Assembly (NCBI RefSeq): GCF_006345805.1
Contig: NC_043001.1
Span: forward strand, 64,976,001 to 65,040,000
Direction of reading: 5' to 3'
From: Octopus sinensis
Taxonomy: Eukaryota
Length of the DNA: 64,000 bases
In this document: piece by piece, positions 40,830-62,350 of the stretch
Layout: each line of letters starts with the position of its first letter
How positions within the stretch are numbered: the stretch's first letter is position 1
The notes under the pieces: model-generated
What the model saw: the letters and a program-made list of their open reading frames with translations, nothing else
Told to the model about the DNA's origin: nothing
The model's database searches: none
Translations under genes and position numbers: made by a program

Positions 40830-40865
40830 TTTTTACGTTTTGAGCCTACGCTCTTCAACAGAAAG
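40830..40865 (-). ncRNA. Minimal hammerhead-like motif (CUGUUGA core, G12A)
   Basis: The minus strand reads ttt-CTGTTGA-a-gagc gtag gctc-aAAA-CGT-A-aaa, the same architecture as 26301. Confidence 0.4.
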
Positions 40866-40932
40866 ATACACAGAAAAGAAACACAGAAAGAAACAAGGAG
40901 AGAAAAAAAAATGCGTGCAGAAGCTAGCGAAT

Positions 40933-41000
<68 letters not shown>

Positions 41001-41017
41001 TATATATTATATATAAT

Positions 41018-41066
<49 letters not shown>

Positions 41067-41596
41067 TAGTAATAACTGATTATTATGTATGCTTATAAAT
41101 GTAAATAGTATGTACATTTAAGTATATATATAAGAATTATTGTATATTTATATATGTATGTATGTGTAGATCTATATATATATATAAGTATTTAAATGTG
41201 TGTGTATTTTTATTTATTCTATATTTATATTTATTCGTAACTTAACCTTATGTACTTTATAAATCTCTGACAAAGCCTAGAGAAACACCCGGGTACCTCA
41301 ATTTCATCTACTTATTACTTCAGTCTACTGGAGAAATAAAGATAGAATGAGGTATTTTTGCCTCTTGGCTGAAACAGCTGTAAGTTACTTTCCCAATTTA
41401 TATTCATGTATGTTATATTGTAATAATTACTGGTATCTTTATATATTAATATATTTTATATTTCATATGTAAAGCATAATATGTTATACATTTATGTATA
41501 TTCTTGTAATTGTCAGTTTAGTAAATAAATAAGTTGACATAATATAATGTCTAAAATTTGATGAACCACTTATTGATCCCTGCCATTATCTTATTA

Positions 41597-41678
<82 letters not shown>

Positions 41679-41737
41679 TGTGTATATATATATATATATA
41701 TAAAAAAGTTGAGTTGTGGGTATCGCACGAGTGGGAT

Positions 41738-43713
41738 TATATAAGAAAAAAGGTTTGAAAATGCAATTTAAACGATGTTTATTTACTTAACCGGTTTCAC
41801 TCTTTGGTAAAAGATTGTCAAAAGTAACATTAAAAGTATCATTGAATAATATGGGTTCCAAATAGTTTTTACATAATTGTCACATTGAATATTATGCATT
41901 CAAAAAAGTTTTTTACATAATTGTCACATTGGATATTATGAATTCAAAAATGTTTTTTTTATTTGTACAAAATGTACATAAGTATAAATATAGTGTTTGC
42001 TAACAGAGAAGTTCAATAGTGTGATGAGAATATTTGGAAAAATTGGCAGAAAAGGATAAAACAAAATATTATTGGAAATTTGGTTGCGTTAATTATTGGT
42101 TGTCGCAAATTGTCACATTACATGTATATATATACAGTCTTTGGTATGTATATCCAATATTTTGACAACAAATTAAAATGGATTTTTTATACATCTCAGA
42201 ATATTTTAAGTTGAAGGCGAGAATGTGTTGTTACTAACCTGTTTATTTTAGCAGAAAGGTTGAATTGAGAGAAAAAAGGTTGTACCCAGTTGTGGGTATA
42301 CTCCCCTTCAAGCATCAATGGTTTTGGGGTTATCAGGAGGTTAGTATGCCTGCTGGTCAAGCAGCTTCTGTTTGTCACACACATATATACACACACACAC
42401 ACACACACAACAACACACACACACACAGCATACAAACACACACCACATACACACAACACACACACACACACACACACAGAACACACACACACACACAACG
42501 CACCCACATATATAATATATACACACAACACACAAATATAACATGTATTTATATATAATATACAATGTATGCATTGTATGTATGTATATTGTGTGTATAT
42601 GTGGTATATCTATGTATGTGTATGTAAACACTATTTATATGTATACATGTATATATGTATATGCATTGTCTATATATATATATATTATATGTATGTATTG
42701 CGTACGTATATTGCATGCATAAATTGTGTATGTGTATTATATACATGCTGTATTTGTATATTGTATGTGTATATATATGCTAGGTGTATTTGTGGGATAT
42801 TTATATTATGTATGGATGTGTGCGTGTGTTGTGTGTGTGTGTGTGTGTGTTGTGTGTGTATGTGTGTTATATATATATGTGTGTGTATATTATATATAAA
42901 TACATGTTATATTTGTGTGTTGTGTGTATATATTATATATGTGGGTGCGTTGTGTGTGTGTGTGTGTTCTGTGTGTGTGTGTGTGTGTGTTGTGTGTATG
43001 TGGTGTGTGTTTGTATGCTATGTGTGTGTGTGTGTGTGTTGTTGTGTGTGTGTGTGTGTGTATATATGTGTGTGACAAACAGAAGCTGCTTGACCAGCAG
43101 GCATACTAACCTCCTGATAACCCCAAAACCATTGATGCTTGAAGGGGAGTATACACCACACTGGGTACAACCTTTTTTCTCTCAATTCTGCCTTTCTGCT
43201 AAAACAAACAGGTTAGTAACAACACATTCTCGCCTTCAACTTAAAATATTCTGAGATGTATAAAAAATTCATTTTAATTTTTGCTGTCAAAATATTGGAT
43301 ATATATACCAAAGACTGTATATATATACATGTAATGTGACAATTTGCGACAACCAATAATTAACGCAACCAAATTTCCAATAATATATTTGTTTTATCCT
43401 TTTCTGCCAATTTTTCCAAATATTCTCATCACACTATTGAACTTCTCTGTTAGCAAACACTATATTTATACATGTAATGTGACAATTTTGTATAAAAAAA
43501 ATTTTTGAATTCATAATATCCAATGTGACATTATGTAAAAAACTTTTTTGAATGCATAATATTCAATGTGACAATTATGTAAAAAACTTTTTTGAACCCA
43601 TATTATTCAATGATACTTTTAATGTTACTTTGACAATCTTTTACCAAAGAGTGAAACCGGTTAAGTAAATAAACATCGTTTAAATTGCATTTTCAAACCT
43701 TTTTTCTTATATA
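41738..43713. repeat. ~2-kb inverted repeat: arms 41738-42563 and 42885-43713, microsatellite spacer
   Basis: Arms are colinear reverse complements, including unique sequence, a ~43-bp subrepeat and (CA)n/(TG)n tracts, with scattered differences. Confidence 0.95.
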
Positions 43714-43751
43714 TATAATATATATATATTATATATATATATATATGTGTG

Positions 43752-43805
<54 letters not shown>

Positions 43806-45081
43806 ATGTATATATATTATATGTATATGTATGTATATATTTGTATGTATGTATGTATATATATGTGTGTGTGTATGTGTGTATATGTGTGTGTGTATGT
43901 GTGTGTATGTATGTATGTATGTATCTATCAACATACATACACACACGCATACATACATACATACATGGAGACAGAGAATGGGGAGGAGAGACTGCATTCT
44001 TATACACAGGTGCTCAGCAATGCAAAATGTTTTAGGTATTAGTGGTTGTATTTATGCAAAAATATGCTGAACTCTTGTGACATCCTTGCACATGGGAGCT
44101 GGTAAAGATTAATTAATGACACCTCATGTACCTGACTGCTGAATTTAGTAGATTACCATGGTACAGACAGCTTTTAGGAAATCTTACTACTATGTGAGAA
44201 ATGACATAAGAAGCTCATTGTAAACAGGGCTCGGGTGCTCTACAACTTGTCAGAAAAGGTTAAAAGAGGAGACAAAAAACAGACATACAAGGCAAGCAAA
44301 GAAAGACAATGGAAGCTTTAAGTGCATGCACAGTAGACAATAAGACACAAACAATAAAGAAAAGTAAACATTAAAAGAGTCAGAAAAAGCAAAGGAATCA
44401 TATGTACACCAGGAGTAGTATTGGTGAATTTTGGGAAGCATGGAATTTTAAGAGGATCCAAATATATAGAAAAGCAATTAAAGATAATTAAAAATTCATT
44501 GGAACATTGGCGCTAAGGCTTGTCTAAATTAAATGTCTTGACCTTATTTAGTTTTAGGATTAGAGATTAGTGTTAATTTGAGTGATTAAATATCTAATTA
44601 AGCCCTGGAATTAGGGCCCTTGTTAATAACAATTGAGCAGGCCACTACAGAGCAATTACTTGAAAATAAGCAGATTTTAAATAAGGTTTTACTGTCAATC
44701 TCTACAATAACAAACCCTGAGATAATGAAGGTGTCTCTATAAATTCACTTGATTTTCTAGAAATAGCAGATCACATCGAAAGGATGCATTGGACAATATA
44801 GATGAGGTGGTAACACCTGGATGGACTTATGTTTGTATATGTCTTTCTCTACATGTTTGTGTGTGTGTGTGTATGGACTGTGGGGTATGTATGTGTGTGT
44901 TTGTGTTTTGAATCTATGTATTTCATGTGTGTGCATTTGTATATTTTTTGTATGTATATGTGTGCTGAAGTTTAGTAATTGTTATAGATTATTGCTTTGC
45001 TTTGGTCCATCAATTTAAAAACTGAAGTTTTAGGGTCACCATGCTGAGATTCAGTGACATATAATGTGAGTTTTGCTTTAG

Positions 45082-45296
45082 CCCTTTTGATGCCAACCTG
45101 CCTGAAACTGCTTCTGGCTCTGTAGTACAATTGTTTTGCTTTCAAAAGCTCTAAATTAAAATCTTCCACCAATAATAGTCACAATTTATGTTTCTAACAC
45201 TAGCTTAATGATAACCAAGTTATTTTGCTAACTTCTTTGTTATATTTCAAATTAATTGAAACACAGCATATCAAGAGAAATGTGGTAACAAATGGG
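45082..45296. mobile_element. Probable piggyBac-type MITE
   Basis: TTAG|cccttttgatgcc ... ggtaacaaatggg|TTAA; left end degenerate. Confidence 0.5.
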
Positions 45297-45347
45297 TTAA
45301 ACCTGGTGGAACCTGTACCGTTTTGAGGTTTGATTTGAGAGTGAGTA

Positions 45348-45394
<47 letters not shown>

Positions 45395-45412
45395 TAGATA
45401 GATAGATAGATA

Positions 45413-46045
45413 AGTTTCTTTATTGGCCACACAGGGCTGCACACAGATGGGACAAATTACAAGGTAGAGCTTTTATTTTGTGGGATGAAAAAAACCAAAA
45501 AAAAGCAAAAAAAACCAAAAGAAACAAAAAAAAGTGGCGTAGGTTTTCGATCAAAAGGGATCGTAAAAGGGGAAAAAGAAAACATAAAGGAAAATAAAAA
45601 TAAAAAAGGAAGAAAAAAGAGGGAAAAAGGGGGAGAGGAAAAAAAACGATCAATAGGGATCGTGTATCACAGTGTCATGATGTACGGTGTAAAGGGGGAA
45701 GAAGATAAGGTTTATCCTTGGGAAGAAAAGCCTACGAAAAAGACCACGGTAACCTCGGTCAATATTGTTATATGTTACCACATTTGTTTGCAAGTGGGTA
45801 ACCCTCTGTTTTCAATTTCTGGGTTCATAGGATTATGCTCAAGGTGGCTTCGTCATTCATACGTGCCATCCTTGCTACATTCACCCATCTTTTTTTAAAA
45901 CATTCGCTAGACAAAACTTGCCTCTCTACTCTCACTTTCCTTTTCAAGTGGTACTTGAAGAAGTTGATGAGAGATTGACCAGAGAGGAAAGTGTTTGTCT
46001 CCAATCCTTTCAGACGCGTCCACCAGATACATTCCTTTGCCATAA
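45413..46045 (-). mobile_element. 5'-truncated L1/Tx1-clade copy bounded by (GATA)n tracts
   Basis: MAKECIWWTRLKGLETNTFLSGQSLINFFKYHLKRK matches the ORF2 end of the adjacent element; 3' end ..gtgtggccaataaagaaact followed by (TATC)6. Confidence 0.85.
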
Positions 46046-46431
46046 GATAGATAGATAGATAACTTTTTATTGTAGCCACACAGGGCTAAACACAGAATAA
46101 AAATGGACGAAATACAATGTAGAATTTTTTCTTTTCGAGGTGAGATGGGTGGGGCACAAAAAAAAAAGTTTGATCAATAGGGATTTGTGGGTTGTGTGGT
46201 GTATAAAAAAGCAATATATATATATAAAGTTCACAGTTTAGGTGTAGCCTTGGAAAGAAAAACCTACAAAAAAGACCAAGGTCACCTCAGACAGTTCGAA
46301 AATGAACACATGAGTAAGTCGCCTTACTTCTCGTTCTCTTTTGGTTACAGATTTATGCTTAAAATAGTGTCGTCTTTCATACTGACCATTTTTGCCACTT
46401 TTACCCACTTTTTATTAAAACATTCGGTCGA

Positions 46432-49400
46432 CTAAGCCTTCTTCTCTATTTTCATCCTCCTTTTCAAGTGGTACTTGAAAAAGTTGACGAGAGACTGACC
46501 AGAGAGGAAGGTGTTTGTTTGCAGTCCTTTCAAACGCGTCCACCACACACATTCTTTCGCCATAGCCATCAGCGTAAGGAAAACCGTTTTCCCTTCCCGT
46601 TTAAAGGAAGGTGGTGGAACAACATATACACAATAGACTCGGCCGATAGGCGGGCCCGACCTACACGTAACAACAGCTGTTCGACGAAGGTCCATAGCTC
46701 TGAAATATCTGGACACTGCACGAGTGCGTGCAGAACGGTTTCGTCGCTCTGACCGCATCTCGGGCAGGTCGGTCCGGTGATGGTTTTCGAACCGTGCCTG
46801 TAGCTCTTCTCTCGAACAGGTAGTGTGTCTCGATAGCACTGCCAAGCCAGGGATTTCTGGAAGTTATCCATAGGCACCGGCCCGAACGTCATCCTGAACA
46901 GGCGGGTTAGGAATTTCTCGTCGACGCCCAGGTTTGCCCCGAGTGTGTCGTCGGACCTCCCCTCCACTAGTCCTCTATAGAACGCTTTAGTCGTTTGTAA
47001 GTTGCACAAGTTTGACCCCGGTCGGCAGAGTTGCTGTAGAGCTTGGTGACACTCTCGGTGCCAATCGCCCAGTTTCGGTCTCTTCTTGATCCACGTTTGC
47101 AGTTCGGTCAGTGAGACGAGCTGCAGGAAGGCTCGCCTCACAAACGGCGCCCACACCTGTTCACCGTCGTCGATGAAGTTCCAGAGATGTTGCAGTCTCA
47201 GCGCATGCCTGCGCATCATCAACCACGGCATGCCCAGTCCTCCATTCAATGGATGTTGACAGCAAATGGACTTCCTCACCATCGGAACGCCACCCTTGCA
47301 CAGGAAGCGGAAGAGTATGTGTTCAAGTTTGGTGATGGTGGCGTCGGGACAAGGTACGACGGTCAGGCGGTAATCGATGACGGATGCGATGTACGCGTTC
47401 GCCACCGCCGCCCGGCCTTTTAGAGACAGCTTTCTCTTGGCCCATGTATGGCTGAGAGCGACCACTCTACTCGTGATCTCGTCCCAGTTCTTATCCATTT
47501 GGAGGTCCGGACTGAACCAGACCCCGAGCAATTCAACCGGTCCGTCAGTCTAGCGTCCCACTACTGAGCCGCATTCGGATGGCATGGGCTTGCTTCTCCA
47601 GGTGCCAAGTAGCAAACCCACTGACTTTTCCGGGTTAATCTTCGCTCCCGTCACCGTTTCGTATTTTCTTAGTGTCTCGCCTATCATCTGGATGTGTTTG
47701 TCGCTCGACACTATGACGGTGACATCGTCCGCATATGTCGACATGCTTGTCCCGCAACCCAGTTCCCGTGGGATGCCCCTCAGTGTTGCCAGCTTCCGTA
47801 GTAGCGGCTCGAGAGTCAATACATACAGAAGCGCCGACAAGGGACACCCCTGACGGACCGAACGCGTGATGTCAAACGGTTTCGACAGGTGACCGTTCAC
47901 CCGAATCACTGATCGGATGCCACTATACAAGGCAGCGATCCAACCGCGGAAGATGGGACCGAAGCCAGCCGCCCTGAGGACGGCCGCCAAGTACCGATGG
48001 TCGACCCTATCGAAGGCTTTAGACTGATCCAAATTGATCAGCCAGGATCCTTAACTACCCTGTCCACAATGTAGCGCATCAGATGGAGGTTGTCATGTAT
48101 GGTTCTGCCCGGCACGGCGCATGTTTGCGCCCTGTCGACCAGTTTACCAATGAGAAGCGCCAACCTCTTGGCTATTACTTTGGCCAAAATTTTCAAATCT
48201 GCGTTGAGCAGAGTGATGGGCCTGAAATTATCTATAACATTTCCCTTGTTTGGATCTTTCTTTAGCAACGTCACTGCACCTCGGCTCACGAAACCAGGGA
48301 TTCTCCCTTTTTGTTGCCAGTTGCAGTAGACTGATGCCAACAGGTCGCCAAACAAGTCTGGCATTTGACAATACAGCTCATAGGGTAAACCATCCAATCC
48401 AGGCGACTTATCCCTCGCACAGCCCGCCATTGCATCCTGCACGTCCGCGGCTGTGATGGGACTTTCACAACACTCCGCTTCTCTTGCCGAGAGCCGCGGC
48501 AGGTCGGTCAGGTAGGCACTGAAATCCATCCCGTGTTCCGACCCACCACTCGCACCAAACAGTCGAGCAAAGTGCCGTTGAAAGGCCTCACACATCCTTT
48601 CGGGTTCGAGTAAACTGCATCCCTGTTGATCTATTAGAGACCGAATGGTGGCTCTGTTCCCATGCTGCTCCTCCGCTATCCGGGCCTCTCGCGCAGCTTC
48701 GATTCCTTCGTTCCTTAAGGCACGCATTTTAGCTCTGACGACGCAACCTTCGTGCTTGGCGTTGAGGTGTTGGTCGAGGGCCATCCTCGCAGCCAGCACG
48801 TTGGTTGCGCTGCCAGTGGTAAGTGCCTCTTCTAGTTTCTTAACCAGGTCTCCCTCTACTCTATTTCGATCTATCGCTAATTCCTTGCTAAACCTAATTG
48901 ATTCCGATTTTATTGCCATTTTTCAGGGCATACCACCAGCGGTTGTTAACGACGGCTCCCGTCAGCGCCCTTTTAATTAACTCGCTAATCTGGTTCCTGT
49001 AAACCTGTCGCGCTAAGAGCGACATGTTCAGTTTCCAGTAACCGGGACCCTGTCTATGTGTCTTATCTAAGTCGAGCGTACACGTCACAAATTTGTGATC
49101 TGTGTAGCTGACTATTTTAAATTGTGGACATCCTACACTATCCCTATCCGCTGTTCTGCATAGAATTCTATCTAGATAAGATCTTGACGATCCGACACGG
49201 TTTGTCCAAGTCCACGTTGGCACGTTCGGATGGTCGAGTCGGAACCTGTCAGACAAATGGAAACGTCTGAGTAGGTCTTTGAGGCACTTACATCCCCTTC
49301 TATTCCTATCCATTCCCACATAATCTAGATACGTGTCCAAGGTAGCGTTCCAATCCCCTACTAACAGTAAAGTTCTAGACGTACCCAGGAAAACCTCTAG

Positions 49401-49772
49401 ACGTCTGAAGAAATCCGCCCGACCCGTTAAGGATGGTGCATAAACTGCCATCAGACAGAATGCACACCCATTTCTGCCATCCACGTCCAAGACAACCAGC
49501 CTACCCTCCGGGTCTAGGAATATTGTTCTTACTTTTACATTTAGACTCTCTCGAAAAAGCACCGCGGTACCTCCACCACCCATGTTCGGCAGACAGGGAG
49601 AAAAATAAATGTCAAATTGATCGCCACACATGGACACGAGGGCCCGTGGCTTGCTGAGTCTGGTTTCACTGATAGCTACTATATCCACGTTCAGTGACTT
49701 GATGTTTACAAGGTAACCTTGCTTCCAAGCCGACGCCAAGCCATGCGCATTCACACAACCTAATTTAAGCAT
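46432..49772 (-). pseudogene. Tx1/L1 ORF2 (APE, RT, CCHC) broken by three frameshifts and one W-to-stop
   Basis: GCVNAHGL, ISET, VYAP, VGDWN, YLDRI, YTDH, GPGYWKLN; KSPGLDGLPYELY, NFRPITLLNADLKILAK, DQSKAFDRVDH, RQGCPLS, YADD; CPRCGQSDETVLHALVQC. Breaks near 48900, 48035, 47550 (in-frame TAG) and ~46620. Confidence 0.92.
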
Positions 49773-49978
49773 AATTGACGTTTACGAAAATTGTGTTTCA
49801 CACACTACATTGGAAGAGACAAGAGGCAAGAGGGAAGGTCACTTACTCATTTCGAAAGTTTCATTTTTTTCTTCTTCTTTTGTAGTGTCTTTGATGAGGT
49901 GTTTGTATAGTTTTTTGGAGAGGTATCGTTGAAACCCGCCTACCGCATTTGGAAATCTTGTTTTCAGTGTATGGTGTT

Positions 49979-50520
49979 GTTAGTTAGTTAGTTAGTTAGT
50001 TAGTTAATTTGGCTCAAAAGCAAATAGCAAGGCCATGTAGGGGGACATGGAGTTAAGTACAGGGTGGTGTTCATGTAAAGAGTTCAGGCCACTTGAGGTC
50101 CAGGGAGGCTTTGAACAAAGCGGTCGTCGGCATCTTCACCATCTCGTCTGGCAGCTTGTTCCGCGGATCCGCAACCCAGACGGAGAAAGCTCCTCTCCTT
50201 CGATTGAGATGAAATCGTCGCAGGTAGAGCTTTTCGGAATGACCCCGCAGCCGACGCTCTGGAGCAGGAGTGAAGAACAGCTCTTTCGAGAGGTTACACT
50301 TCCCGCTTATGATGTTGTGGGTGAGAATGAGATCACCACGGCGGCGGCGTTTTTCAAGAGAATAAAGGTCGAGCGTCCTCAGCCTTTCTTCGTAGGACAA
50401 ATTTTTGAGACCATGAACCATGCGGGTAGCCAGCCTCTGGACTCTTTCGAGGTGCTGTATGTCTTTGAGTAGATAAGGAGAAGAGGCTTGAATCCCATAC
50501 TCCAATATGGGTCTCACCAG
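49979..50520 (-). mobile_element. 5'-truncated CR1-clade LINE with (TAAC)n tail
   Basis: RPILEYG..LERVQRLATR..LSYEERLRTLDL..SLEKRRRRGDLI..RGHSEKL..N.LP..FKASLD. Confidence 0.92.
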
Positions 50521-52204
50521 CGTGTTTGTGTTATGTGTACAATTCTTATGTGTTTTGGTGGTGTGGTGCGCGGATGATTGTTTGTCTTAAGGTCATCTTC
50601 ACAGATGTCCGTGTTTGATGCAATGTAATCTATTAATTTTTTATTGTCTGTGTCTATTGCAGTTAGTTGTGTGTGTGGTTTTGCGGGTTCATTGATTTTT
50701 TGATTGTCTAAGGGGATGCTGTCCGGAGTTAAATATTGCCCTGCTTTACTTCCTTGTTTGGTGGGCTTTTTTGATCTTTTCCTTTTACCCCCTGTGGCTA
50801 TTTGCCATTCCGTCGAACTTTCGTCGTCCGACGAATCTGAAGGGGGTAAAGGCAAAGCATTTGCGTTAATATGTATGCTTGTAGAAATTGTTGATGTTTT
50901 GTGCGGTGTTTGTGTTGTTGTGGTGTTAGGGGTAGAATTTGTCTTCTTGTCACTGTTTTCTGTCTTTTTAATTGTCGTCCTCGGTGTTGGTGTTGGTCTA
51001 TCTTTTGGTTCAGTATGTTGAATTGGTTGCGACGTCAACGGTGATTGTGTTGGTACTGTTTCTTTTCTTGGTGATGTTGTTGGGGTTTGTTTGCTGGTTT
51101 GTTGTTTTTCTTGGCATTGTTCCATAACTGAGTGTGTTGGTGTTGGCAACAAGTGTTTTTTATTTATTTTCTGATTTGTTCTTTCTTGTTTTTTCTGTGC
51201 CAGAGCGCACTTGGCAATTAAATGTTCTGGGCTGCCACAGTTGTAGCATCTAGGCTTTTTGCCTTCCGCTACAACATATAGGCTTTGCCCATTTTCTAAA
51301 TGGATCCTATCAGGTAGGTTCTCGATAGAGGACCCCTCAATCTGGATGGTCACTACTATTGTTTTACCACCCCAATTGTCGTTTTTGTACACGGCGGTTT
51401 CTAATATATTTATCTTTTTCAAATGGTAACAGATTGCCCCTGTTATCCATTTGTTAGGTATCTGAGGGGTACATTTTTAATGCTAATTCTACTCACTCTC
51501 TGGCTTTTGTAATATGGTACCATAATGATTTCATCATTTTGCAAAGACTCCGTAGTGAGCTTTTGCCACTTCCTGGTTAGGGAAGCGGACCACCACTGTA
51601 TTAAACTGGGGACCCCAGTTTATATATTCTTTTTTTTCATTATGCTTTTTAAACACTTTTCTATGTCCGTTTTTGTAATCTGTTCATTTTGTTTTTTGTT
51701 TTTTCTTATAATTTTATATATAATTGTCTTATTTTCTATTTCTTCCTTTATGTGTTGAGGTGTATGCAGCACTAAATCTTGCCCTTGGGTTGTAAAGAGT
51801 GCTCTCGTTTCTATTAACTCTTCATTCGTAAATTTTACTATTTCTTTTTTCTGATGCAGAGTGTCAGCGAAATTTACTGGTGTTGTTGATTCTTTTATAT
51901 TAACATCTTCACTAGTAGATAGTAAGATATTTATTTCCTTTTTATTGTTCTTGTTGTTTTTGTTAATAGTTTTCGCGTGAGTTTCATTTTTATCATTTAT
52001 GTTGGTCATGGTGGTGGTGGTGGTAGAGGTGGTGGTGGTAGTAGTAGTAGTCTCGTTGTTGTTGTTAGTGGTGGTGGTGGTGGTGACAGGGCTGTTACCG
52101 CAAGTGGTTGCAGCGTTCACTACCACGTCATTCAGGTTTGCACTTTGCATGCATAAGTTCTTTTTTTCTCCTAGCGTTTCCAGACTAGGAAAATGCTGGT
52201 CCAT
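50514..52204 (-). pseudogene. Tx1/L1 ORF1 (gag-like, CX2CX4HX4C knuckle), frameshifted and interrupted by CR1
   Basis: CYNCGSPEHLIAKC in ORF 50514-51422. ORF 51620-52204 continues across frameshifts through EYINWGPQFNTVVVRFP..VPYYKSQRVSRISIKNV. A probable ORF1 remainder lies at 49850-49978. Confidence 0.75.
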
Positions 52205-52454
52205 AAAGGAACGTGACCAGCGTTCTACAATAACATTTCACGACATTTTCAAAATGTCGAGAAGAAAAATACACAAATTAAATAGGGTTGAAACTGCCCC
52301 TAGGGGCGAATTCCTCCCTTGGGAAAGCACTCAAACGAAAGTTGGGTGCCTTACACACCTTATTTACAAAAATGTACACAAAATATGGGCTATAAATAGT
52401 CAAAATAAACGATTACCTTCGGAGCCAAGGTGACAACACATCCGTCGATAAATA

Positions 52455-53396
52455 CGAGGGGCGTTCAATAAGTAATGCCCCTGACCCACTTCCCATAGCA
52501 GTAGAGCAACGAACTTGGCACAGTTATTAGTCTTTTTCTACATAGCAACCACCCAGAGTTACGCATTTCTCCCATTGTTTGATGCAGCTCTGGAGACCGT
52601 TTTTGTAGAAGACCCCAGCTTGGTCCTCCAACCTGAACGTGACTTCAGAAATCAAGGCTGCATCATCTGGGAAACGCTTTCCTTTCAAAAACAACTTCAT
52701 GACTGGGAAGAGGTGAAAATCAGAGGGTGCAAGGTCAGGAAAGTAGGGGGATGGGGGAGGAGTTCATAGCCATACGCCTGTGCTTCTGATCTGGCAACAA
52801 GCGAGTTGTGGACCGGAGCGTTGTCCTGCAGGAGGAGGATGCCTTTGCTGATCTTGCCCCGCCTCTTGATTTTGATAACTTCTCTTAATTTCCTCAAAAG
52901 TGAAGCATAATAGGCTCCTGCAATTGTGGTACCCTTTGCCAGGAAATCTGTCATCACTACTCCGTCCTGGTCCCAGAAGACTGTGAGCATGACCTTGCCA
53001 GCGGAGGGCTGCACCCTTGCCTTCTTTGGAGGGGGTGAGTCACGGTGCTTCCACTGCATTGACTGGGCTTTGGTCACCAGATCAGAAGCACAGGCATGCA
53101 GCTATGAACTCCTCCCCTTGCACCCTCTGATTTTCACCTCTTCCCAGCCATGAAGTTGATTTTGAAAGGAAAGCGTTTCCCAGATGATGCAGCCTTGATT
53201 TCTGAAGTCATGTCGTGGTTGGAGGACCAAGCTGGGGTCTTCTACAAAAACGGTCTCCAGAGCTGTATCAAACGATGGGAGAAATGCATAACTCTGGGTA
53301 GTTCCTATGTAGGAAAAGACTAATAACTGTGCCAAGTGTCGTTGCTCTACTGCTATGGGAAGTGGGTCAGGGGCATTACTTATTGAACGCCCCTCG
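52455..53396. mobile_element. Mariner foldback: 3' half of the transposase (minus) joined to an inverted copy of its own 3' end
   Basis: TA|cgaggggcgttcaataagtaatgccc ... gggcattacttattgaacgcccctcg|TA; KVMLTVFWD..LLLQDNAPVH..HPP..DLAPSDF; strand switch near 53075. Confidence 0.93.
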
Positions 53397-53619
53397 TAAT
53401 AGAAAAGATTAGCTTCATGTGAGAGGCAGGAAAAATACTCTCTTCATCATAGTCAACAATTCCTTTAACTTAGGGTTGAGCTAACCAAGGAAACTTGTCT
53501 GTTGTCTGTACTTTCTATATGTATCTCTGATGTGTTTTTGACTAAGAATTGGTTGGTTACTTATTTGTGTGGCAAGAGGTGTGGATATTGTGTTCATGGT
53601 ACATGCTTATTATTTTTTA

Positions 53620-53915
53620 TTATGCTGATGATCTTGCTCTAATTACTGAGTCACTATCAGAACTAGGGGTAAAGTTTCAGGTGTGGAAGCAAGGATTAGA
53701 ATTGAAGGGCTTTAGACTCAACCTAGCTAAAACCAAAGTTTTAATAAGTAGGAAGGCAGACAAAACTTTAGGTAGATGTCCCTGCTTGATCTGTAGAAAA
53801 GGTGTAGGTAGAAACTCCATAAGATGTACCCAGTGTAAGCTATGGACACACAAGAGGTGCAGCAATACCAAAGGGAGGCTAACTGAGAAGATAGATTTTG
53901 TATGTGGCAAATGCC
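53620..53915 (+). pseudogene. Internal RTE fragment (YADD to PHD-like finger)
   Basis: YADDLALITESLSEL..CLICRKGVGRNSIRCTQCKLWTHKRC..CGKC. Confidence 0.85.
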
Positions 53916-55045
53916 TTAAAATATATTTTAATAATGAAGAAATGGTTAGACTCAGAACATAAATATAACAAGATATGAGCACCAAATTTTTTATGCAACC
54001 CATTTTTCTTAAATGGAAACAAGAAAAATTTTTTAATTGGAACATCTAGTCATTATTGAGTTTTTCAGCTTCAAGATATTAATTAGTTAATCTAGTATAG
54101 CTCGATTAATTTTATAACTGAGTTTTTCAACATTATTCTCAAATAAAATTTACCCCAATTAGTGTCTGAAAGTACATACAAATGTAGAAATTTATTGGGT
54201 TTTGTTTTTCTTTCTAATTCACAGCACTAATCTTTGATATAACTCTCTCCATTAATGCCTATCACTGCAATCTCTTTGACATCATTCAGTGTCTGTTTTC
54301 TGTGCTGGTATGGGTTGAACAACTTGACTGGTTCTGGAAAATCACAGGGTTGCATTGAGCCCCTTTGTCAGCTTTGGCATGGTTTCTGTGACTGGATATC
54401 CTTTATGATGCCAACCACTGATCATAAGTGAGGTCACCAAGTAACTTTCAAGAGAAGAAAAGAGCGTGAAGAAGGAAAAAGGAAAAAGCCTCCTCCACTA
54501 AATGGTGGTGGATATTTGAGAAGAGTATAGGAGAAGTGGTGCTCCAATGCCAGGTATTGAGAAGCTGAAATGTCTTGCTATAGAAAAGATACAAGACTGC
54601 CCCGCCCCACCCACATTAGGTGGGTGGTAGTAGCTGGAAATAAAACAGATGGTGGTGGGATATCTGGGCATCACAACATACAAAAAAGGTGCATATAAGG
54701 GAGGATATAGTCAGTGGATCAGGGGTGGGAGGGGGAAGTTTTATAAGAGTGTGAGGGGTAAGTAAATAAATGGTTAGAAATAATAGTGGGGAATGTATGT
54801 AGTGATAAGCAAGGTGCAGTTGATGGGAAATACCAGTATAGAGAGGGGTGAGATGAGAGATGTAGGAGTGGTTTAGGAAGGTCAAAAAGTAGGAGAATGA
54901 TGTGCAAGTTGTAGGAGAGGTGAGGAAGGATATGTAGTGGTACATAAGGTGGGGGTGGGGCATAGTAAGTGGGGTGTGATGGCAGATATGAAAGAGTATT
55001 GAGAATGATAACAGATATGAAAGGTATTAAGGATGGAATGATATA

Positions 55046-55274
55046 AAAGGCAGCAAACTGGCAGAATCGTTAGCACGCCGGACAAAATGCTTAGCGGTAT
55101 GTCGTCTGCTGTTACGTTCTGAGTTCAAATTCCGCCAAGGTTGACTTTGCCTTTCATCCTTTCGGGGTCGATTAAATAAGTACCAGTTACGCACTGGGGT
55201 CGATATAATCGACTTAATCCGTTTGTCCTTGTTTGTACCCTCTGTGTTTAGCCCCTTGCGGGTAGTAAAGAAAT
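55046..55274 (+). mobile_element. tRNA-derived SINE (family 3) with a 24-bp TSD
   Basis: A box tggcagaatcgtt, B box gagttcaaattcc, body ttgcctttcatcctttcggggtcga; aggtattaaggatggaatgatata at 55022-55045 and 55275-55298. Confidence 0.9.
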
Positions 55275-55374
55275 AGGTATTAAGGATGGAATGATATATG
55301 TGCCAATTCTGCTCTCAGTTGATCGCAGTAGCTGAGTAGCACCTTCTAAGAAAGATACAAGACTGGAAATTTGG

Positions 55375-55530
55375 GGTTGGGGTCAGTCGATTAAATCTAC
55401 CTCAGTACTTGACTGTACTTTATTTTATCAAACCTGGAAGGCTGAAAGGTTAAACTGAAATTAGCAAGATTTGAACTCAGAACATAAAGAGCCAAAACCA
55501 TACTGCAAGATATTTTGTGTAATGCACTAA
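55375..55530 (-). mobile_element. Decayed SINE family 3
   Basis: Reverse-complement similarity (gatttgaactcagaac, cagtac..ttattttatc) to the 55046 copy. Confidence 0.6.
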
Positions 55531-57824
55531 CAAGCCTACCAATCCACATAATTAGTAATAATACCTGAATTTCTGCAAGCTTAATTTTAATGACAGGCTT
55601 TTTGTTGTTGTTGTTTAACTCCAGGACAGTCCTAATTGAGTAGTTCTATGATCATAGACATTCTAGATATGACCATCCTCTTCTTCATGCAAAATATATC
55701 TAGGACTACACTATCTAACATATTCCATTTTGCTTAAAGATGGCAGGGAGATTTGGTTGCTATTTATAGTATGAAATGCAACCATACTGAGGTGTTCTGA
55801 ATGGCTTGTTATACAGTTGTTGTTTAATATCAGAGTAAGATGACTTGGTCACAGCCTGGAAGGGAAGGACACATTAGATAATGTAGTCCTAGTTAGTCCT
55901 AACATGACAGGATGGTCATGGCTGGTCTACTAGATTTGCTCAATCAGGATTGAGATGGAGATACACAACAGCAATGACAGCTGTCTTGTAATCACCCTGT
56001 TACTAATTCACTTACAACTTGTTGTGATTTTAGTCTTGATTACGTGATTTTGATTGTCTCGATTGCTGCTATATGCCTGCACTGCGACTGCGTGGAGTTC
56101 TGTTCTGTTTGCAGACGACATGTTCAGTGTTGATTTTAGTTAGTTGAGAATGTAGAAACTCGCTGCATAAGAAATGTTATTGCGTTGAAGTTTGGTTTTG
56201 CTTACAATTTAGCAATCTTTGTTTGTATCATATATTGCTGTATTTTTAGTCGATTAAAACCTTTTAAACTTTGATATTTGAGTATGGGTTCATAACACAA
56301 CTAACACTAAATTGGTTTCAAGTATATCACTTCGTCATAATCATTGTCATAGTAACTTCAATGATCAACACATTCAGTTGTTTCTCTACCCACTTATAAA
56401 CATGACACTAAAACACCTCATTAGTTGCTTGTCTTGCTAAGTGTCAGGGTGCTAAGCAAAATTCTATAACAACAAAGCAACCATGAACCAACAGTGCCCT
56501 GCAGCTGTAACTGCATCATTAACAAGTGGGTAGCTGCAATATTAAAAACAAAATACTTATCATTTCCTCAAGAAAAAAACATGAACTGTTGTGTAGCAAA
56601 TTGTCTTTCAAGTCACCATTCATGTCTTAAGTATAACAGCAATACAGTTAGAGCAACTCATTTCTCTTTTGCCAATCCTTTGTAGTGTACAATAATTGCA
56701 CAACCATAATATTTACTTTCTTTGAATGAAGATAAAAGAATCTCTCCTTTCCCTCATTCTTTTTAACTTATGCCTGCTCAAAAAGTAGATGCTGCTTCAT
56801 ATACTAATAACAACAATGTGTTAAGATGTACCCCAATATATATTTTTTTAGCAATATCAATGTGCTAAGATGTATCTCACCAATGAGAATTTGAAGGAAA
56901 ACCTGCCATGCTGCGACTGAATTAATCCTGGTCATGCCCTCTGTGGCTACCACCGAAAATATCTGATACACAAACATGAATTGTTTGTGTACAGGGAAGC
57001 AGCATGTCTGGATTGTTAAAATGGATCTCATACGACAAACATTGCATGTTGGGATGTACTGTATAGTTTTTCAGTTTGGCAGAGGTATGGAATTAACTGA
57101 AATAGATTACACCTAATTGTTTCACTGACTTTATGAGTACCACACATATGCTTACTTAGGGGTTGGCTTAGGGTTAAACAAGAACAAAACAATGCCATTA
57201 AAGGGAAAATAAAGTGATTCCCGATGAAGAATTTCGTAGGACAAAGCCTATATACAGAAAGTGAATGCTATTGTTTAGCTCTTAGTCATTCTTGATTGAG
57301 TTGATCTATGATTTAAGGCATTCCAGCTGTGACCATCCCACTTACTTATTTACAACCCATCCAATGTGTTCTTCCTTTTTCAAAATGGTAGAGTGTGATT
57401 TGAGGGAGATTAAGTTGTAATTTTAAGCAAGATGACATGTAGAGGCTGTCATTGTCTTCCATGTCTGTAGTGTGCCAGTGAAGATAACAGCATTAATATA
57501 AAGGTTAATGAAGTCAGAGATGACAGAACCCTGACTCTCACTAATGTTGTTAACATTGAATAATCCAAACTATTACAACTGTGAAACTTGATAGGGATTT
57601 GTTTATTGTAAATGCAAAATAGATTTGAAAGGGCAAACATATAATCACAAAAAGCCTATAGAACAAAACAAGTGTTTACTGTATATCTTTGTATGCATTA
57701 CTATTGGATAGTTTGCTGTATATCTTTATACAAATTACTAAATGATACTATTATAATAAGAAATATATTATATCTTTACAGAGATATATTTGTAAGTAAA
57801 TATATACTTTCTCTTTCTTTTCAG

Positions 57825-60800
57825 GTTCTCTATTTACAATATTTGACAAGTCAAAAGATGACAGAACATCTGGTATATTGATGTATTTCAAAGATGATGC
57901 TTCATCAGTCGAAACTTCAGTGAATTTGTTTTCTAGTTTTACACAAGCTCAAACCAAATCATTCCTTCAGCAATATCAACTTGAAGTTCTTCTTAGTCCT
58001 TCTAGTTCTTCTTATTTCCAGTCTAGTTCATCTATTTTACTTTCCTCAAATAATTTACAAACCAATGGGCCCTCAATTTCTTTGGCATCGTCTTTAGTTA
58101 CAGCTTGTCTTTCAATTTCTATGTTTAACAGTCTTACTGCCAATATTGAAGACCCTAATAATTTACATTCCATTGGAATATCACAAACTGAATTTGTATC
58201 TGAAGGTGACAGCTCCATTTCAGATATGTTTAATCCATATTTCCAACCACTTGATAACTTTTTTCCTGTATCTAATTCCTTGTTACTGGATTCAACTAGC
58301 CAAATATTGAAATCTATTTTAGCACTAGAAAATTTAAATGATTCTATGGCATTAGAAAACTTTCCTGTTCTCAAAATGAAACCATTAATGAAGGAGCAGA
58401 ACATCAACCAAAGTAAATTTGATTCACAGATCTATACCATTTCTACTGGAGTCAGTTCTTTAAATATTAACAGCAGACTATTGAATATAAATACTAGTTA
58501 TGTATATAGTTTTAAACAACAGCCACACACTCAAATTAATTCAGACTCTCCATTTGATGAAATGATGTCAGAATCACAAATATTTTCATCATCATTTGCT
58601 TTGAAATCATCACAGCCTTATATATCCCCTATTTTTCAAACTACAAGTAAACTTCTCTCAGAGACGCAAACTCGATCAGATTTTGATCTTAATGCAAAAC
58701 AATATTTTACTCAGAAGAATTTTTATTCTTTATCTACATTGAAAGATCTTATAACCAAAAAGTCTGGCTCTACTGAGACAGAGAATCTCCACGGCGCTCT
58801 AATAATTTATTCTACCCAACAAATGCTATGGGCTAATTCTAAGACAGAAAGTATGTCACCATATAAATGTGATCAAACTAAACTATTTGTTCTCCATCCT
58901 TCACAATCACAAATATCTCAAATAGATGAAATAGAAAGTCTGTATCCAATCAATAAAAATCAAATATTCTTATACAATGACCATTTCTTGGGATCTTTTC
59001 AAAGTGCAATATCCCAGAGTTATTTGAGCCCATTTAAACATTTTACCACAAATGAGAGACCATTTTCTGATTTGAAGTTCTCTCTATCAGGAAATACTTT
59101 TGCCTCAGTGAATGATCCAGCTTCTTCCACTTTTAGAAGACCTATTACTAATTCATTGGAATCTAATTCATTACATCAGCCAAAATTTATCAAACTAACC
59201 ATATCTCAGTTGATCTCAGCTTATTTTGATGAATCTCAAATACATTTTGATAGTAAAGAGCTTTTATATATGGCAACTGCTGCTGCCATTTCTGAAATAC
59301 CTCAACAACAAGCAAAATGGTTAAGCAACTCTTTCAATTTTCAGAAATCTTTTCACAATAATTTGTATCAGTCTATCATACCAATGTCTCATTTTAACGA
59401 TAATCAATCATTACTACCATCATTAAAGTCTGAAATTTGGGATGTATCTAATGAATTTTGGAAATCAAAACTTGAGCCAGTGATAATGAAATCACCTGAA
59501 GCTAATCTTTTTGGCTCTAATAGTGATAATTTAGTTCCAACTTTGAGACATCGAACAACAGATATTGTAAATCCTACCCAGAGCATGTTACAATATTTCT
59601 TGGAGAATTTGTATACAGAATCTATGACAATAGATGAATTTGATACAAAAGAATCTCCTCACTTATCAAATACAGAAATATTGGAACCATCTGAGGCTGT
59701 GAGTTTAGTTAATGTTGAGGACCTTTTATTGAGGACCTTACAAAATATTTTCCCATCATTTGTGTCTTTAGGAAAAACTAATACAGACACTTCCTTTACT
59801 TCATCTTCAGAAGAATTATTTCATTTACTAAATTCAGGTCTTTCATTTCATACTCAACCTTCTCACAGCATGGAACTTTTACAACCATCTACTCACACAT
59901 ACATTCCTATTACTGATTTATCTGAACTATCTTTAGCTTCTTCACAGATTCAAATGCCATTAAGTTTTCAAAGTCCAGTTAATTTTGATCTTATGAACAA
60001 ATTTTCTTCACCTAATATGATCTTTTACTCAGATTCTGAACAAATATTGCAAACCTCTCCTGAAAATTTCCAACCATCTCTTACTATGACCAAATCAAAT
60101 GTCTTCAGTGAGGGGCATGATAGTTATGTTTATGATAGCTTACGCTCAAAATTGGAAATTATTACAGCACCAAAAGATTCATTTGATAAAACTCAGAGTT
60201 ATTCCAATCATGTTATTTCCAGCCATATTCCAGAATTAATTGATTCATATTCAAGTTCTTCAACTTTAGAAATACCTGAAAATATTTATTTCTCTAAGTC
60301 TTTATTACCTCTAACATCATTGAAGAACTTAATTAGTACATCATTAACTCCTGAAGTAATTTATTCAAATCCTTTTCTGCCTAATTCCATTCAGTTTGAT
60401 GATCCAAAATTTTCACTATATTCTCTTGAAATAATTGAAATATCTTCTATGATTGATCAGTTTACACAAGAATTGCCATTGATTACGCCTCCAGTTTTTG
60501 GAAATACCATAGAATCAAATTTCAAATATTCTCCAACAACATCTACTTCCTCACAAAGTTCAGATTTCATTAGTTCCACAGAAAATGGAAATACTTCCAT
60601 ATTGGCATCATCCTACTCCAGTAATTCAGTGAATCCTGTTTATGATTCTTCAATGATAAATGTTGCTGTCACCAATTTTACCATGCATAATAGTTTGGTA
60701 TCAACCTTACATTCTGACATTGACTATCAACTGGAATCTATATATTCATCATCAGAATCTGTTTATCTATATTCGTCTCAGATACCACTGTTTGTGTTGT

Positions 60801-61238
60801 CAAGTTTTATTAGTGAAGATAAAGAATCAAACCATTTAATTCCAGAATTTAGTTATCTGTATTCATCTCAGACATCTATGCTTGTATCATCAAGTTTTAT
60901 TAGTAAAGATAATTCAAACCCGAAATCTTCCTCAAATATATCTAATTCTAGTTTATTCACTTCAAGTAATTTAACACTTTCATCCAAACAAATGGCAACT
61001 TTGTTGATATCAAATTATACTTTAGCATCAATTAATACCAATACTTCAACAAAACAGGAGTCATTGAATAATAATAACTCTGAAACAAAGAGAATTTCAA
61101 ATCTTTTGACTGCTACAGAAAGTAGTTCCATGCAAAAAACTGAATTTTATGTTTCTACTTCATCTGTATTGGAAATGTCTTCTCGAAACATGCAGCTCAA
61201 CAACAGCCTTTATTTTCAACATTTTTGGATTGTTACAA
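57825..61238 (+). CDS. Giant internal exon (3414 nt, 1138 codons, phase 1-1) encoding a Ser/Thr-rich mucin-like extracellular stalk; parent gene unidentified
   Basis: Polypyrimidine acceptor ctttctctttcttttcag|G at 57824/5, in frame with the 1154-aa ORF; donor ACAA|GTAAGC at 61238/9; two Cys inside the exon; many N-x-S/T sequons in the last third; no TE motifs. Confidence 0.8.
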
Positions 61239-62350
61239 GTAAGCCAATTTTAGTGATATTTCTATTTTTATTTGGTCACACAAAATACTTTACTGTTCTG
61301 TGTCTTTCACATTCTTCCAATATATATATATATATATGTTAATGTCTTATTTATACTCAGAAATATGGTAGATGCTGCTAATGATGATGATAATGACAGT
61401 GATGGTGATGATATGATTCTCATTGCTGAATCTGTTGAAGCATTGCTGTATAAAGAAAGCAAAACATGAAGTTTGGTTTATTTTCTTGGGTCTGAGTGTC
61501 AACATGTCAAATACTAAACTTAATATCAGTAACATGGAGTATGGCACTGCATGGACCTTGGCAGATATGTAATACAGGAGATGGTAATCTTGTTTAATTC
61601 TGTTGTGATTTTCTTTCTGTTTATTTTGTTTCCTCAAAGATTTTCCATTTGGTGGCCAGCTTGGAGTTCCTAAAATATCTAATCTGTAAGACCCAATTAA
61701 AACATATGTTGCTGACCCACCAAATTTGTTGAATTACCATTTTTTAATTGTATTAACTTGTTCTGAACTGCCCCACCATCTTAGGCGCTTTCATGCAGAG
61801 CTTTGTTTCCTTTCCTTATAACTACTTTTGTTAATCTCTTTCTCTTTTCACTTTTGCTGCTGTTTCTAGCACAGTGAGTATCTCTATAGATACTACCACA
61901 TTGGCACATTTTTAGCAGGTCTCTTTTTATTGGTTTGTAGGTTTTTGATGTGAACAAAAACCATTGTTCTTCCTCTATAGGGAAGTCTGTGAATCGGTCT
62001 GTTAAGGTTTCTAATAGAATCTAAAAGAACTGTGGCTTAAAGATAATGTAGCAGCGCAGAACCTCAAACACTGGAGGTATTTAGATATTGTTCATGATTA
62101 ATAACTACTCTGAGTAAAGCTATATGTAAGCCATGTTTAAAAAAGGGACAACCTTGAAAAAATGATTATTTTCAGGGAAGAAATTATTATTTATGATTCA
62201 ATAAAATTATGAATATTATAATTGATGTATATGTGTGTAAATCCACTGAAATTCTGAAGTTCACAACTGATTTTCTCCAAACTGGGAACTTGGTTGCTTG
62301 TTGGTTCAAGGGACAGGACTCTTGATGATATCTTTTTCTACCACTATATA

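What the first reader, a model, noticed from the sequence alone, without database searches (positions are those of the whole stretch)
57825..61238. 3.4-kb symmetric exon encoding a non-repetitive Ser-rich stalk
Seen: 1138 open codons in very AT-rich DNA, phase 1 at both ends, only one internal duplication (30 aa, at ~60753 and ~60843), and sequons clustered near the C-terminal end. Established: phase 1-1 exons are typical of extracellular modules, and giant Ser/Thr exons occur in adhesion GPCRs, polycystin-like proteins and EYS. Being symmetric, it could be skipped as a cassette. Inference: the stalk of a very large surface or matrix protein. Which family cannot be told from this window.
Basis: partly seen in the sequence, partly recalled or inferred. 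Interest (0 to 1): 0.7.

Follow-up and report, generated by a model that had tools for sequence, protein, structure and literature searches.

The report
Giant exon of octopus KIAA1549 homolog
The 3.4-kb open stretch is a real coding exon, exon 2 of the Octopus sinensis member of the KIAA1549 membrane-protein family, and it encodes that protein's long serine-rich outer domain; this is an ordinary, already-predicted gene part, not a new kind of feature.

Summary
The frame is open from 57800 to 61339 (1180 codons, none of the other five frames is open). A consensus acceptor sits at 57824/57825 and a donor at 61238/61239, both phase 1. There is one ~81-nt duplication, and 9 of 13 N-glycosylation sequons lie in the last 250 residues.

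The window is Octopus sinensis. The exon is exon 2 of LOC115212170 (RefSeq "uncharacterized protein", 1864/1901 aa). Exon 1, a signal-peptide-like leader, lies at 12258-12396, also phase 1, across a 45.4-kb intron full of transposons. The full protein matches Pfam PF12877 (KIAA1549/UPF0606) at 59 bits against a cut-off of 24, and the match begins in the last ~36 residues of this exon. Downstream come an RKKR furin-type site, one transmembrane helix and a cytoplasmic tail. That is the human KIAA1549 layout, whose ectodomain is a mucin-like, densely O-mannosylated region.

In the O. bimaculoides orthologous locus the exon is open and both splice sites are identical. All five indels are multiples of three. 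dN/dS is about 0.70. Selection therefore keeps the frame and the Ser-richness but barely constrains the sequence. No homolog of the exon was found outside Octopus. No gene model skips the exon. Interest is low.

The parts
12258..12396 (+). Coding part of exon 1: ATG plus 46 codons plus 1 base. Encodes a signal-peptide-like leader (MVSSDDIFKTSQLLIIIFWIIFNSQVQC|HKLPP...). Donor is A|GTAAGT, phase 1.
   Evidence: tblastn of P0001 aa 1-47 at 100% identity. Sequence read directly. Hydrophobic h-region by Kyte-Doolittle.
12397..57824 (+). Intron 1, 45,428 nt (29,251 nt in O. bimaculoides). Holds transposon ORFs and microsatellites.
57825..61238 (+). Exon 2, 3414 nt, phase 1 at both ends. Encodes aa 47-1184 of XP_036358607.1, the Ser-rich ectodomain.
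   Evidence: Open, in-frame and with identical splice sites in O. bimaculoides.
57806..57824 (+). Polypyrimidine tract and CAG acceptor of exon 2.
   Evidence: Sequence read directly. Acceptor AG and tract conserved in O. bimaculoides.
61239..61244 (+). Donor GTAAGC of exon 2.
   Evidence: Sequence read directly. Identical over 30 nt in O. bimaculoides.
60752..60920 (+). The single internal duplication. Copies at 60752-60833 and 60842-60920, period 90 nt (E-x-x-YLYSSQ...SSFISxD). Also present in O. bimaculoides.
60590..61207 (+). C-terminal segment with 26% Ser that holds 9 of the 13 N-X-S/T sequons. All 13 sequons are conserved in O. bimaculoides.
61127..61238 (+). Last ~37 codons of the exon: start of the Pfam KIAA1549 (PF12877) match, profile positions 101-137.
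   Evidence: P0001 matches profile positions 101-280 at aa 1148-1332 (59 bits). O. bimaculoides P0005, which lacks the exon-2 residues, matches only 138-280 (48.5 bits).
58222..58223 (+). Internal acceptor-like site ttcag|AT (phase 1), used by a chimeric O. vulgaris gene model (P0004). Status doubtful.
60620..60621 (+). Internal donor-like site A|GTAAT (phase 1), used by the same chimeric O. vulgaris model. It joins directly to exon 3 and would remove the last 206 codons in frame.
61359..61469 (+). Short ORF in intron 2 that O. bimaculoides models use as a terminal exon (…WIVT-I-RNMVESAV…KESKT*). The acceptor tatag|TC of O. bimaculoides reads tatac|TC here, so it is probably not a conserved coding exon.

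Best explanation
**Identity.** Window 57825-61238 is exon 2 of the Octopus sinensis gene LOC115212170, a divergent member of the KIAA1549 (UPF0606, Pfam PF12877) family of type I membrane proteins.

**Gene layout.** Exon 1 (12258-12396) supplies a signal peptide. Exon 2 supplies about 1100 residues of Ser-rich, Cys-, Gly- and Arg-poor, acidic, non-repetitive ectodomain. Its last ~36 residues are the first residues of the conserved juxtamembrane module. Exons beyond the window supply the rest of that module (with an RKKR furin-type site about 85 residues before the membrane), one transmembrane helix and a ~540-residue cytoplasmic tail.

**Inferred mechanism, by analogy with human KIAA1549.** The exon-2 domain would be a mucin-like scaffold densely O-glycosylated on Ser/Thr in the ER. 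In human this is O-mannose added by POMT1/2 and is needed for ER exit. N-glycans would sit near its base. The ectodomain could be released or held after furin cleavage in the Golgi.

**Shown versus inferred.** Shown here:
- It is a coding exon with these boundaries and phases.
- It belongs to a protein with a PF12877 match.
- The protein has a signal-like leader, one TM helix and an RKKR motif.
- Selection keeps the frame open while the amino-acid sequence is nearly free to change (dN/dS ~0.7).

Inferred: disorder, O-glycosylation, furin cleavage and any biological role.
For: **Identity of the exon.**
- It is 100% identical to aa 47-1184 of XP_036358607.1.
- Exon 1 maps in the window with a matching phase-1 donor.

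**Family.**
- Pfam PF12877 hits the full protein at E = 4e-16, 59 bits against a cut-off of 24.
- The same family hits the O. bimaculoides C-terminal half at 48.5 bits.

**Topology.**
- There is a single strong TM helix (KD19 = 2.87 at about aa 1319).
- There is an N-terminal hydrophobic leader.
- There is one R-x-K/R-R motif, at aa 1230-1233.

**Human architecture from the literature.**
- The layout is signal peptide, O-Man mucin-like domain (aa 62-864, at least 92 O-Man sites), S/T-rich region, SEA-like domains with a furin site 74 residues before their end, TM and C-terminal domain (PMC13570299).
- POMT1/2 dependence and disorder of the ectodomain are reported in PMC11292533 and PMC8280732.

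**Evolution against O. bimaculoides (L001).**
- The locus is collinear.
- The exon is open in both species.
- Nucleotide divergence is 3.6%.
- The five indels are 9, 18, 6, 3 and 3 nt. The adjacent intron has indels of 4, 3, 1, 29 and 4 nt.
- dS = 0.049, dN = 0.034, dN/dS = 0.70, bootstrap 95% interval 0.46-1.08.
- Under neutral substitution, P(no stop arises) is about 0.004. P(five in-frame indels) is about 0.004.

**Composition.** Ser is 2.1-fold above, and Cys, Arg and Gly are 0.05-0.28-fold of, what the local base composition would give.
Against: - Only 180 of the 676 Pfam profile positions match. The 410-residue C-terminal tail gives no PF12877 signal even at E <= 1. Homology is therefore shown for the juxtamembrane ectodomain module only.
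- No non-Octopus homolog was retrieved by either protein search. Orthology to human KIAA1549 or KIAA1549L by reciprocal best hit was not established.
- The exon domain has 34% hydrophobic or aromatic residues and only 4.7% Pro. This is unlike classic mucin domains, so it may contain folded parts.
- The only structure prediction (single sequence) was uninformative, with pLDDT 43.
- No transcript or glycosylation data were available.
Confidence: 0.85

Rival explanations
1. The gene is a lineage-specific octopus membrane mucin that shares only one juxtamembrane (SEA-like) module with KIAA1549. It would not be an ortholog, and the giant exon would have no evolutionary relationship to the human O-Man domain.
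For: The Pfam match covers profile positions 101-280 only. The cytoplasmic tail does not match. The exon has no detectable homolog outside Octopus among 1.84 billion representatives.
Against: The order of parts is the same as in human KIAA1549: signal peptide, long S/T-rich domain, the module with a furin-type site at a similar distance from the membrane, TM, long tail. PF12877 is the only family hit and scores well above its threshold. Mucin-like domains usually lose detectable similarity quickly, and dN/dS here is 0.7.
Confidence: 0.1
2. The exon encodes folded domains of an unrecognised type (for example divergent SEA-like or beta-rich modules), not a disordered glycosylated stalk.
For: L, I, F, Y, V, M, W and C together make up 34%, as in globular proteins, and mean hydropathy is only -0.29. 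Human KIAA1549 has three SEA-like domains. Only about 130 residues lie between the exon end and the TM in octopus, so further modules, if present, would have to be in this exon.
Against: There is no Pfam or PDB sequence match for the exon. dN/dS is 0.70, differences are spread evenly over codon positions (47/38/37), and five indels arose in 3.6% divergence. This is unusual for a folded core. Near absence of Cys (0.2%) and Gly (1.3%) is atypical of extracellular folds.
Confidence: 0.15
3. The exon is a regulated cassette, or has an internal alternative donor. Isoforms lacking all or the last 206 codons of the Ser-rich domain would then be made in some tissues.
For: Both ends, and the flanking exons, are phase 1, so skipping keeps the frame. 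An O. vulgaris model joins an internal phase-1 donor at 60620/60621 (A|GTAAT) directly to exon 3.
Against: That model is a chimera with ADAM-like and DENN-domain genes and carries a 'myotubularin-related' name, so it is weak evidence. All four models that begin at exon 1 include the whole exon. No read data were examined.
Confidence: 0.1
4. The open frame is not a functional exon. It would be a chance ORF, a transposon ORF or a decaying pseudo-exon.
For: dN/dS is not significantly below 1 at the upper bootstrap bound. There is no domain hit within the exon.
Against: Chance openness is about 1e-36. The exon is single-copy and collinear in O. bimaculoides. No stop and only in-frame indels occur in either species, with joint probability under neutrality of roughly 2e-5. 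Splice sites are identical. There is no transposon domain, unlike neighbouring ORFs.
Confidence: 0.01

Closest known systems
Human KIAA1549 (UPF0606; RP86 gene; partner in the KIAA1549::BRAF fusion) and its paralog KIAA1549L
   Same: Pfam PF12877 match in the juxtamembrane ectodomain. Both are type I membrane proteins of about 1900 aa. Both have a signal peptide, then a ~800-1100-residue non-repetitive Ser/Thr-rich domain, then an extra S/T-rich stretch with N-glycan sites. A module with a furin-type site follows ~75-85 residues before the membrane, then a single TM and a long tail.
   Different: There is no detectable sequence similarity in the Ser-rich domain or in the cytoplasmic tail. The octopus domain is Ser-dominated (S 19.7%, T 7.4%, P 4.7%) and AT-codon biased. 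The furin-type motif is RKKR instead of RMWR. Octopus has room for only about one SEA-like module after the giant exon, against three predicted in human. O-mannosylation is untested in octopus.
Alpha-dystroglycan mucin-like domain (the other major POMT1/2 substrate)
   Same: A non-repetitive Ser/Thr-rich extracellular region of a membrane-associated glycoprotein complex, processed proteolytically next to a SEA-like module (from PMC13570299 and PMC11292533).
   Different: No sequence relationship and no dystroglycan domains were found by Pfam. The dystroglycan mucin domain is much shorter.
Membrane-tethered mucins such as MUC1 (O-glycodomain, SEA, TM, signalling tail)
   Same: The overall layout. 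The authors of PMC13570299 use the same analogy for KIAA1549.
   Different: Classic mucins have Pro/Thr/Ser tandem repeats. This exon has no tandem repeats, low Pro, and no Pfam SEA hit.

Membership tests
KIAA1549 / UPF0606 (Pfam PF12877) | Match to the family profile above the curated gathering score | tested here: met
   P0001 scores 59 bits, E = 4.2e-16, against a cut-off of 24 (aa 1148-1332, profile 101-280). O. bimaculoides P0005 scores 48.5 bits.
KIAA1549 / UPF0606 (Pfam PF12877) | Type I topology: N-terminal signal peptide and a single transmembrane helix | tested here: met
   By Kyte-Doolittle windows there is one strong TM (2.87, about aa 1319-1337) and an N-terminal hydrophobic leader followed by VQC|H. 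No dedicated signal-peptide predictor was available.
KIAA1549 / UPF0606 (Pfam PF12877) | Large N-terminal non-repetitive Ser/Thr-rich (mucin-like) ectodomain | tested here: met
   The exon encodes 1137 aa with S+T = 27% and no tandem repeats. The human counterpart spans aa 62-950.
KIAA1549 / UPF0606 (Pfam PF12877) | Juxtamembrane SEA-like module(s) containing a furin-type cleavage site | tested here: inconclusive
   An RKKR motif lies at aa 1230-1233, about 85 residues before the TM. The SEA-like fold could not be checked because the single-sequence AlphaFold model had pLDDT 43. There is no PDB sequence match.
KIAA1549 / UPF0606 (Pfam PF12877) | Conserved cytoplasmic region (profile positions ~281-676) | tested here: not met
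   The best matched stretch reported ends at profile position 280. The last 410 residues alone give no Pfam hit at E <= 1.
KIAA1549 / UPF0606 (Pfam PF12877) | Dense POMT1/2-dependent O-mannosylation of the ectodomain | not testable with these tools
   Known for human only (PMC13570299, PMC11292533).
KIAA1549 / UPF0606 (Pfam PF12877) | Reciprocal-best-hit orthology to vertebrate KIAA1549 or KIAA1549L | not tested
   Protein searches returned only Octopus sequences.
   Pfam scan of the full 1864-aa protein finds only PF12877. Only one TM-grade hydrophobic segment is present.
Classic tandem-repeat (PTS) mucins | Tandemly repeated Pro/Thr/Ser-rich units in one large exon | tested here: not met
   There are no tandem arrays beyond 2-3 copies of 9-19 nt and one 90-nt-period duplication. 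Pro is 4.7%.

The most novel reading that the evidence does not exclude
The octopus KIAA1549 ectodomain shares no detectable sequence with the human one. It evolves almost neutrally (dN/dS ~0.7), yet its length, open frame and Ser-richness are kept. If it is still a selective POMT1/2 (O-mannose) substrate, substrate choice would depend on composition or on the adjoining conserved module, not on a peptide motif. That would bear on the open question of how POMT1/2 pick so few targets. A second, weaker possibility is an internal alternative donor (60620/60621) giving an isoform without the N-glycan-rich base of the stalk.
Probability: 0.25. Interest if true: 0.45.

Novelty: new member of a known kind. 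Interest (0 to 1): 0.2.

Why it matters
- It gives a family name (KIAA1549/UPF0606) to an octopus gene that RefSeq lists as uncharacterized.
- It shows that O. bimaculoides annotates the same gene as two loci, and that O. vulgaris has chimeric or truncated models of it.
- KIAA1549 is a human retinitis pigmentosa gene and the usual BRAF fusion partner in pilocytic astrocytoma. Its normal function is unknown.
- A cephalopod member with the same layout but an unrecognisably different, frame-preserved, near-neutrally evolving ectodomain supports one idea. What matters in that domain would be bulk properties (length, Ser/Thr content, glycosylation), not sequence.
- Beyond that, the finding is an ordinary annotated exon.

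Tried and rejected
1. **Pfam on the exon alone:** no hit. The PDB sequence search of the exon and of the juxtamembrane region also gave no hit.
2. **Exhaustive HMMER search of the exon** against 1.84 billion representatives: only the Octopus cluster.
3. **Word-indexed searches:**
   - The exon and the full protein returned only four Octopus clusters.
   - A typed 700-aa C-terminal query returned nothing, not even the protein it was cut from. I treat that as a tool limitation, not as evidence.
4. **The look-up of encoding contigs:**
   - P0001 and P0003 are not on record.
   - For P0002 the gene range is too long, 169 kb.
   - P0008 succeeded and gave the O. bimaculoides locus.
5. **Single-sequence AlphaFold2** of aa ~1075-1350 gave pLDDT 43. 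It was not used, and no fold search was run on it.
6. **Rfam on the whole window:** nothing.
7. **Chance ORF, transposon ORF or pseudo-exon:** rejected on the calculated probability of a chance open frame, on orthology and on indel phase.
8. **The O. bimaculoides 'terminal exon' just downstream (61359-61469) as a conserved secreted-isoform exon:** rejected, because its acceptor AG is AC in O. sinensis.
9. **Antisense ORF 58012-58407:** its length is only marginally unusual against codon shuffles (2.3%) and nothing else supports it.
Full report

Yes. The frame containing 57827 is open stop-to-stop from 57800 to 61339, 1180 codons, the longest open stretch in the window. Across 57825-61238 the other five frames hold 57-135 stop codons each. 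From the local base composition the chance of 1180 open codons is about 1e-36.

The sequence upstream reads ...ctttctctttcttttcag|GTTCTC, with the AG ending at 57824. Downstream it reads ...GTTACAA|GTAAGC, with GT at 61239-61240. With the first full codon at 57827 and a lone first codon base at 61238, both ends are phase 1.

The translation is 19.7% Ser, 10.8% Leu, 7.6% Asn and 7.4% Thr, with almost no Cys, Gly, Arg or Trp.

Tandem Repeats Finder sees only trivial arrays. 5-mer self-matching finds a single duplication, with copies at 60752-60833 and 60842-60920.

There are 13 N-X-S/T sequons, fewer than composition shuffles give (22 +/- 3.9). Nine lie in the last 250 residues (binomial P = 3.6e-4). 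That segment is also the richest in N, S and T.

**2. What is it?**

A protein search with the exon gave a 100% match to NCBI XP_036358607.1, [quoted passage not shown], 1864 aa. It also matched O. vulgaris (99%) and O. bimaculoides (91%).

Mapping that protein back to the window places aa 1-47 at 12258-12398 and aa 47-1184 at 57824-61237. Exon 1 starts at the ATG at 12258 and ends at 12396 with the donor A|GTAAGT, phase 1. The split codon A+GT gives the Ser at position 47. Intron 1 is 45,428 nt.

Later exons lie beyond the window. The two O. sinensis isoforms differ only by a 37-residue cassette in the cytoplasmic tail.

**3. Family**

The exon alone has no Pfam hit. The full protein matches PF12877, "UPF0606 protein KIAA1549", at E = 4.2e-16 and 59 bits against a cut-off of 24. 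The match covers aa 1148-1332 and profile positions 101-280.

The O. bimaculoides protein P0005 begins just after the exon-2 residues. It matches profile positions 138-280 at 48.5 bits. The last ~36 residues of the giant exon (about 61127-61238) are therefore the start of the conserved module.

Hydropathy shows one strong transmembrane segment (about aa 1319-1337) and an N-terminal hydrophobic leader. The only R-x-[KR]-R motif is RKKR at 1230-1233.

The literature describes human KIAA1549 as a type I membrane protein with these parts in order (PMC13570299):
- a signal peptide;
- an O-mannosylated mucin-like domain (aa 62-864, at least 92 O-Man sites);
[quoted passage not shown] - a TM and a C-terminal domain.

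O-mannosylation by POMT1/2 is required for ER exit and furin processing (same paper). The ectodomain is described as highly disordered (PMC11292533). The protein is lost from photoreceptors when Pomt1 is deleted (PMC8280732).

The octopus protein has the same order of parts. Exon 2 corresponds in position to the O-Man domain plus the S/T-rich region.

The limits of this assignment are:
- Only 180 of 676 profile positions match.
- The cytoplasmic tail does not match.
- No non-Octopus relative was retrieved.
- The SEA-like fold could not be checked, because the model had pLDDT 43.

**4. Is it under selection?**

The orthologous O. bimaculoides locus was fetched as L001 and is collinear with the window. 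There the exon spans L001 32396-35788. The acceptor AG and its pyrimidine tract are conserved, and 30 nt at the donor are identical.

| Measure | Exon 2 | Next 1 kb of intron |
|---|---|---|
| Nucleotide divergence | 3.6% | 4.8% |
| Indel sizes (nt) | 9, 18, 6, 3, 3 | 4, 3, 1, 29, 4 |

Both species have zero stops in the exon.

Nei-Gojobori estimates are dS = 0.049, dN = 0.034 and dN/dS = 0.70, with a bootstrap interval of 0.46-1.08. Differences are spread 47/38/37 over codon positions.

Simulating 122 neutral substitutions gives at least one stop in 99.6% of runs. Five in-frame indels have probability (1/3)^5 = 0.004.

So selection clearly preserves the reading frame, while the residue sequence is only weakly constrained. 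Ser is enriched 2.1-fold over what the local base composition would encode. Cys, Arg and Gly are depleted to 0.05-0.28-fold. This is what one expects of a spacer or glycan-scaffold domain whose bulk properties matter.

The C-terminal 726 residues are 94% identical with no gaps between the two species. That is only slightly more conserved than the exon (92.4%).

**5. Cassette idea and alternative forms**

Skipping exon 2 would keep the frame, since exon 1, exon 2 and exon 3 all have phase-1 boundaries. No model does this.

An O. vulgaris model (P0004) uses internal phase-1 sites at 58222/58223 (ttcag|AT) and 60620/60621 (A|GTAAT). However, it is a chimera with ADAM-like and DENN-domain genes.

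O. bimaculoides models end in a short exon that corresponds to window 61359-61469. Its acceptor AG is AC in O. sinensis, so it is unlikely to be a conserved coding exon. The O. bimaculoides annotation splits the gene into LOC106873933 and LOC106878674.

**6. Verdict**

This is a genuine, already-predicted coding exon. It is the giant exon 2 of the octopus KIAA1549-family gene and encodes its Ser-rich ectodomain.

Cassette skipping is unsupported.

Novelty is limited to naming an unnamed cephalopod family member and documenting frame-preserving, near-neutral evolution of its ectodomain.

Noticed in passing
window 2917-6042 (-): Intact 1042-codon LINE ORF2 with apurinic-type endonuclease, reverse transcriptase and a weak PHD/C1-like zinc finger. 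GC is ~50%, well above the surroundings. It lies upstream of the gene. Related copies occur at several places in the O. bimaculoides locus.
   Followed up: partly
window ~46572-52237 (-), inside intron 1: Degenerate LINE split over several ORFs (zinc knuckle, endonuclease, RT, zf-RVT). The 8-kb stretch at window 45406-53397 corresponds to only ~0.7 kb in O. bimaculoides (L001 23808-24500). It is therefore a lineage-specific insertion or deletion, and part of why intron 1 is 45.4 kb here against 29.3 kb there.
   Followed up: partly
window 15038-16036 (-): 333-codon ORF with an ISXO2/IS1595-like DDE transposase domain (Pfam PF12762, E = 7e-16). It is probably a Merlin-type DNA transposon in intron 1 (the superfamily name is from memory).
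   Followed up: no
window 62524-62838 (-): 104-codon ORF whose sequence (…HLPYLLDIAPSDYHLF…) looks like the C-terminal part of a mariner-type transposase. Pfam gave no hit at E <= 0.01, so this rests on recollection only.
   Followed up: no
window 2199-2866 and 40027-40233: A ~61-63-nt GC-rich tandem repeat (10.9 copies), and 3.4 copies of what by eye looks like its reverse complement. It is probably part of a repeat or SINE family.
   Followed up: no
window 58012-58407 (-), antisense to the exon: An open stretch of 131-139 codons on the opposite strand, also open in O. bimaculoides. Its length is reached by 2.3% of codon shuffles. It is most likely a by-product of the sense-strand codon content.
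   Followed up: yes
window 61359-61469 (+); L001 ~35905-36018: Short Asp-rich ORF just after the exon-2 donor, used as a terminal exon in O. bimaculoides RefSeq models. Its acceptor is not conserved in O. sinensis.
   Followed up: yes
public gene models (not window coordinates): Annotation problems for this gene. O. bimaculoides splits it into LOC106873933 and LOC106878674. O. vulgaris CAI9722309/CAI9722310 fuse part of it to ADAM-like and DENN-domain genes under the name 'myotubularin-related protein 13-like'. Another O. vulgaris model (P0002) skips the SEA-like and TM exons.
   Followed up: partly
tool behaviour: the search for homologous proteins with a typed 700-aa C-terminal fragment of P0001 returned no hit at all, not even P0001 itself. 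The same protein given by id was found.
   Followed up: no
window 11912-11935: A (GA)n microsatellite about 320 nt upstream of the start codon of exon 1. The 5' UTR and promoter were not examined.
   Followed up: no
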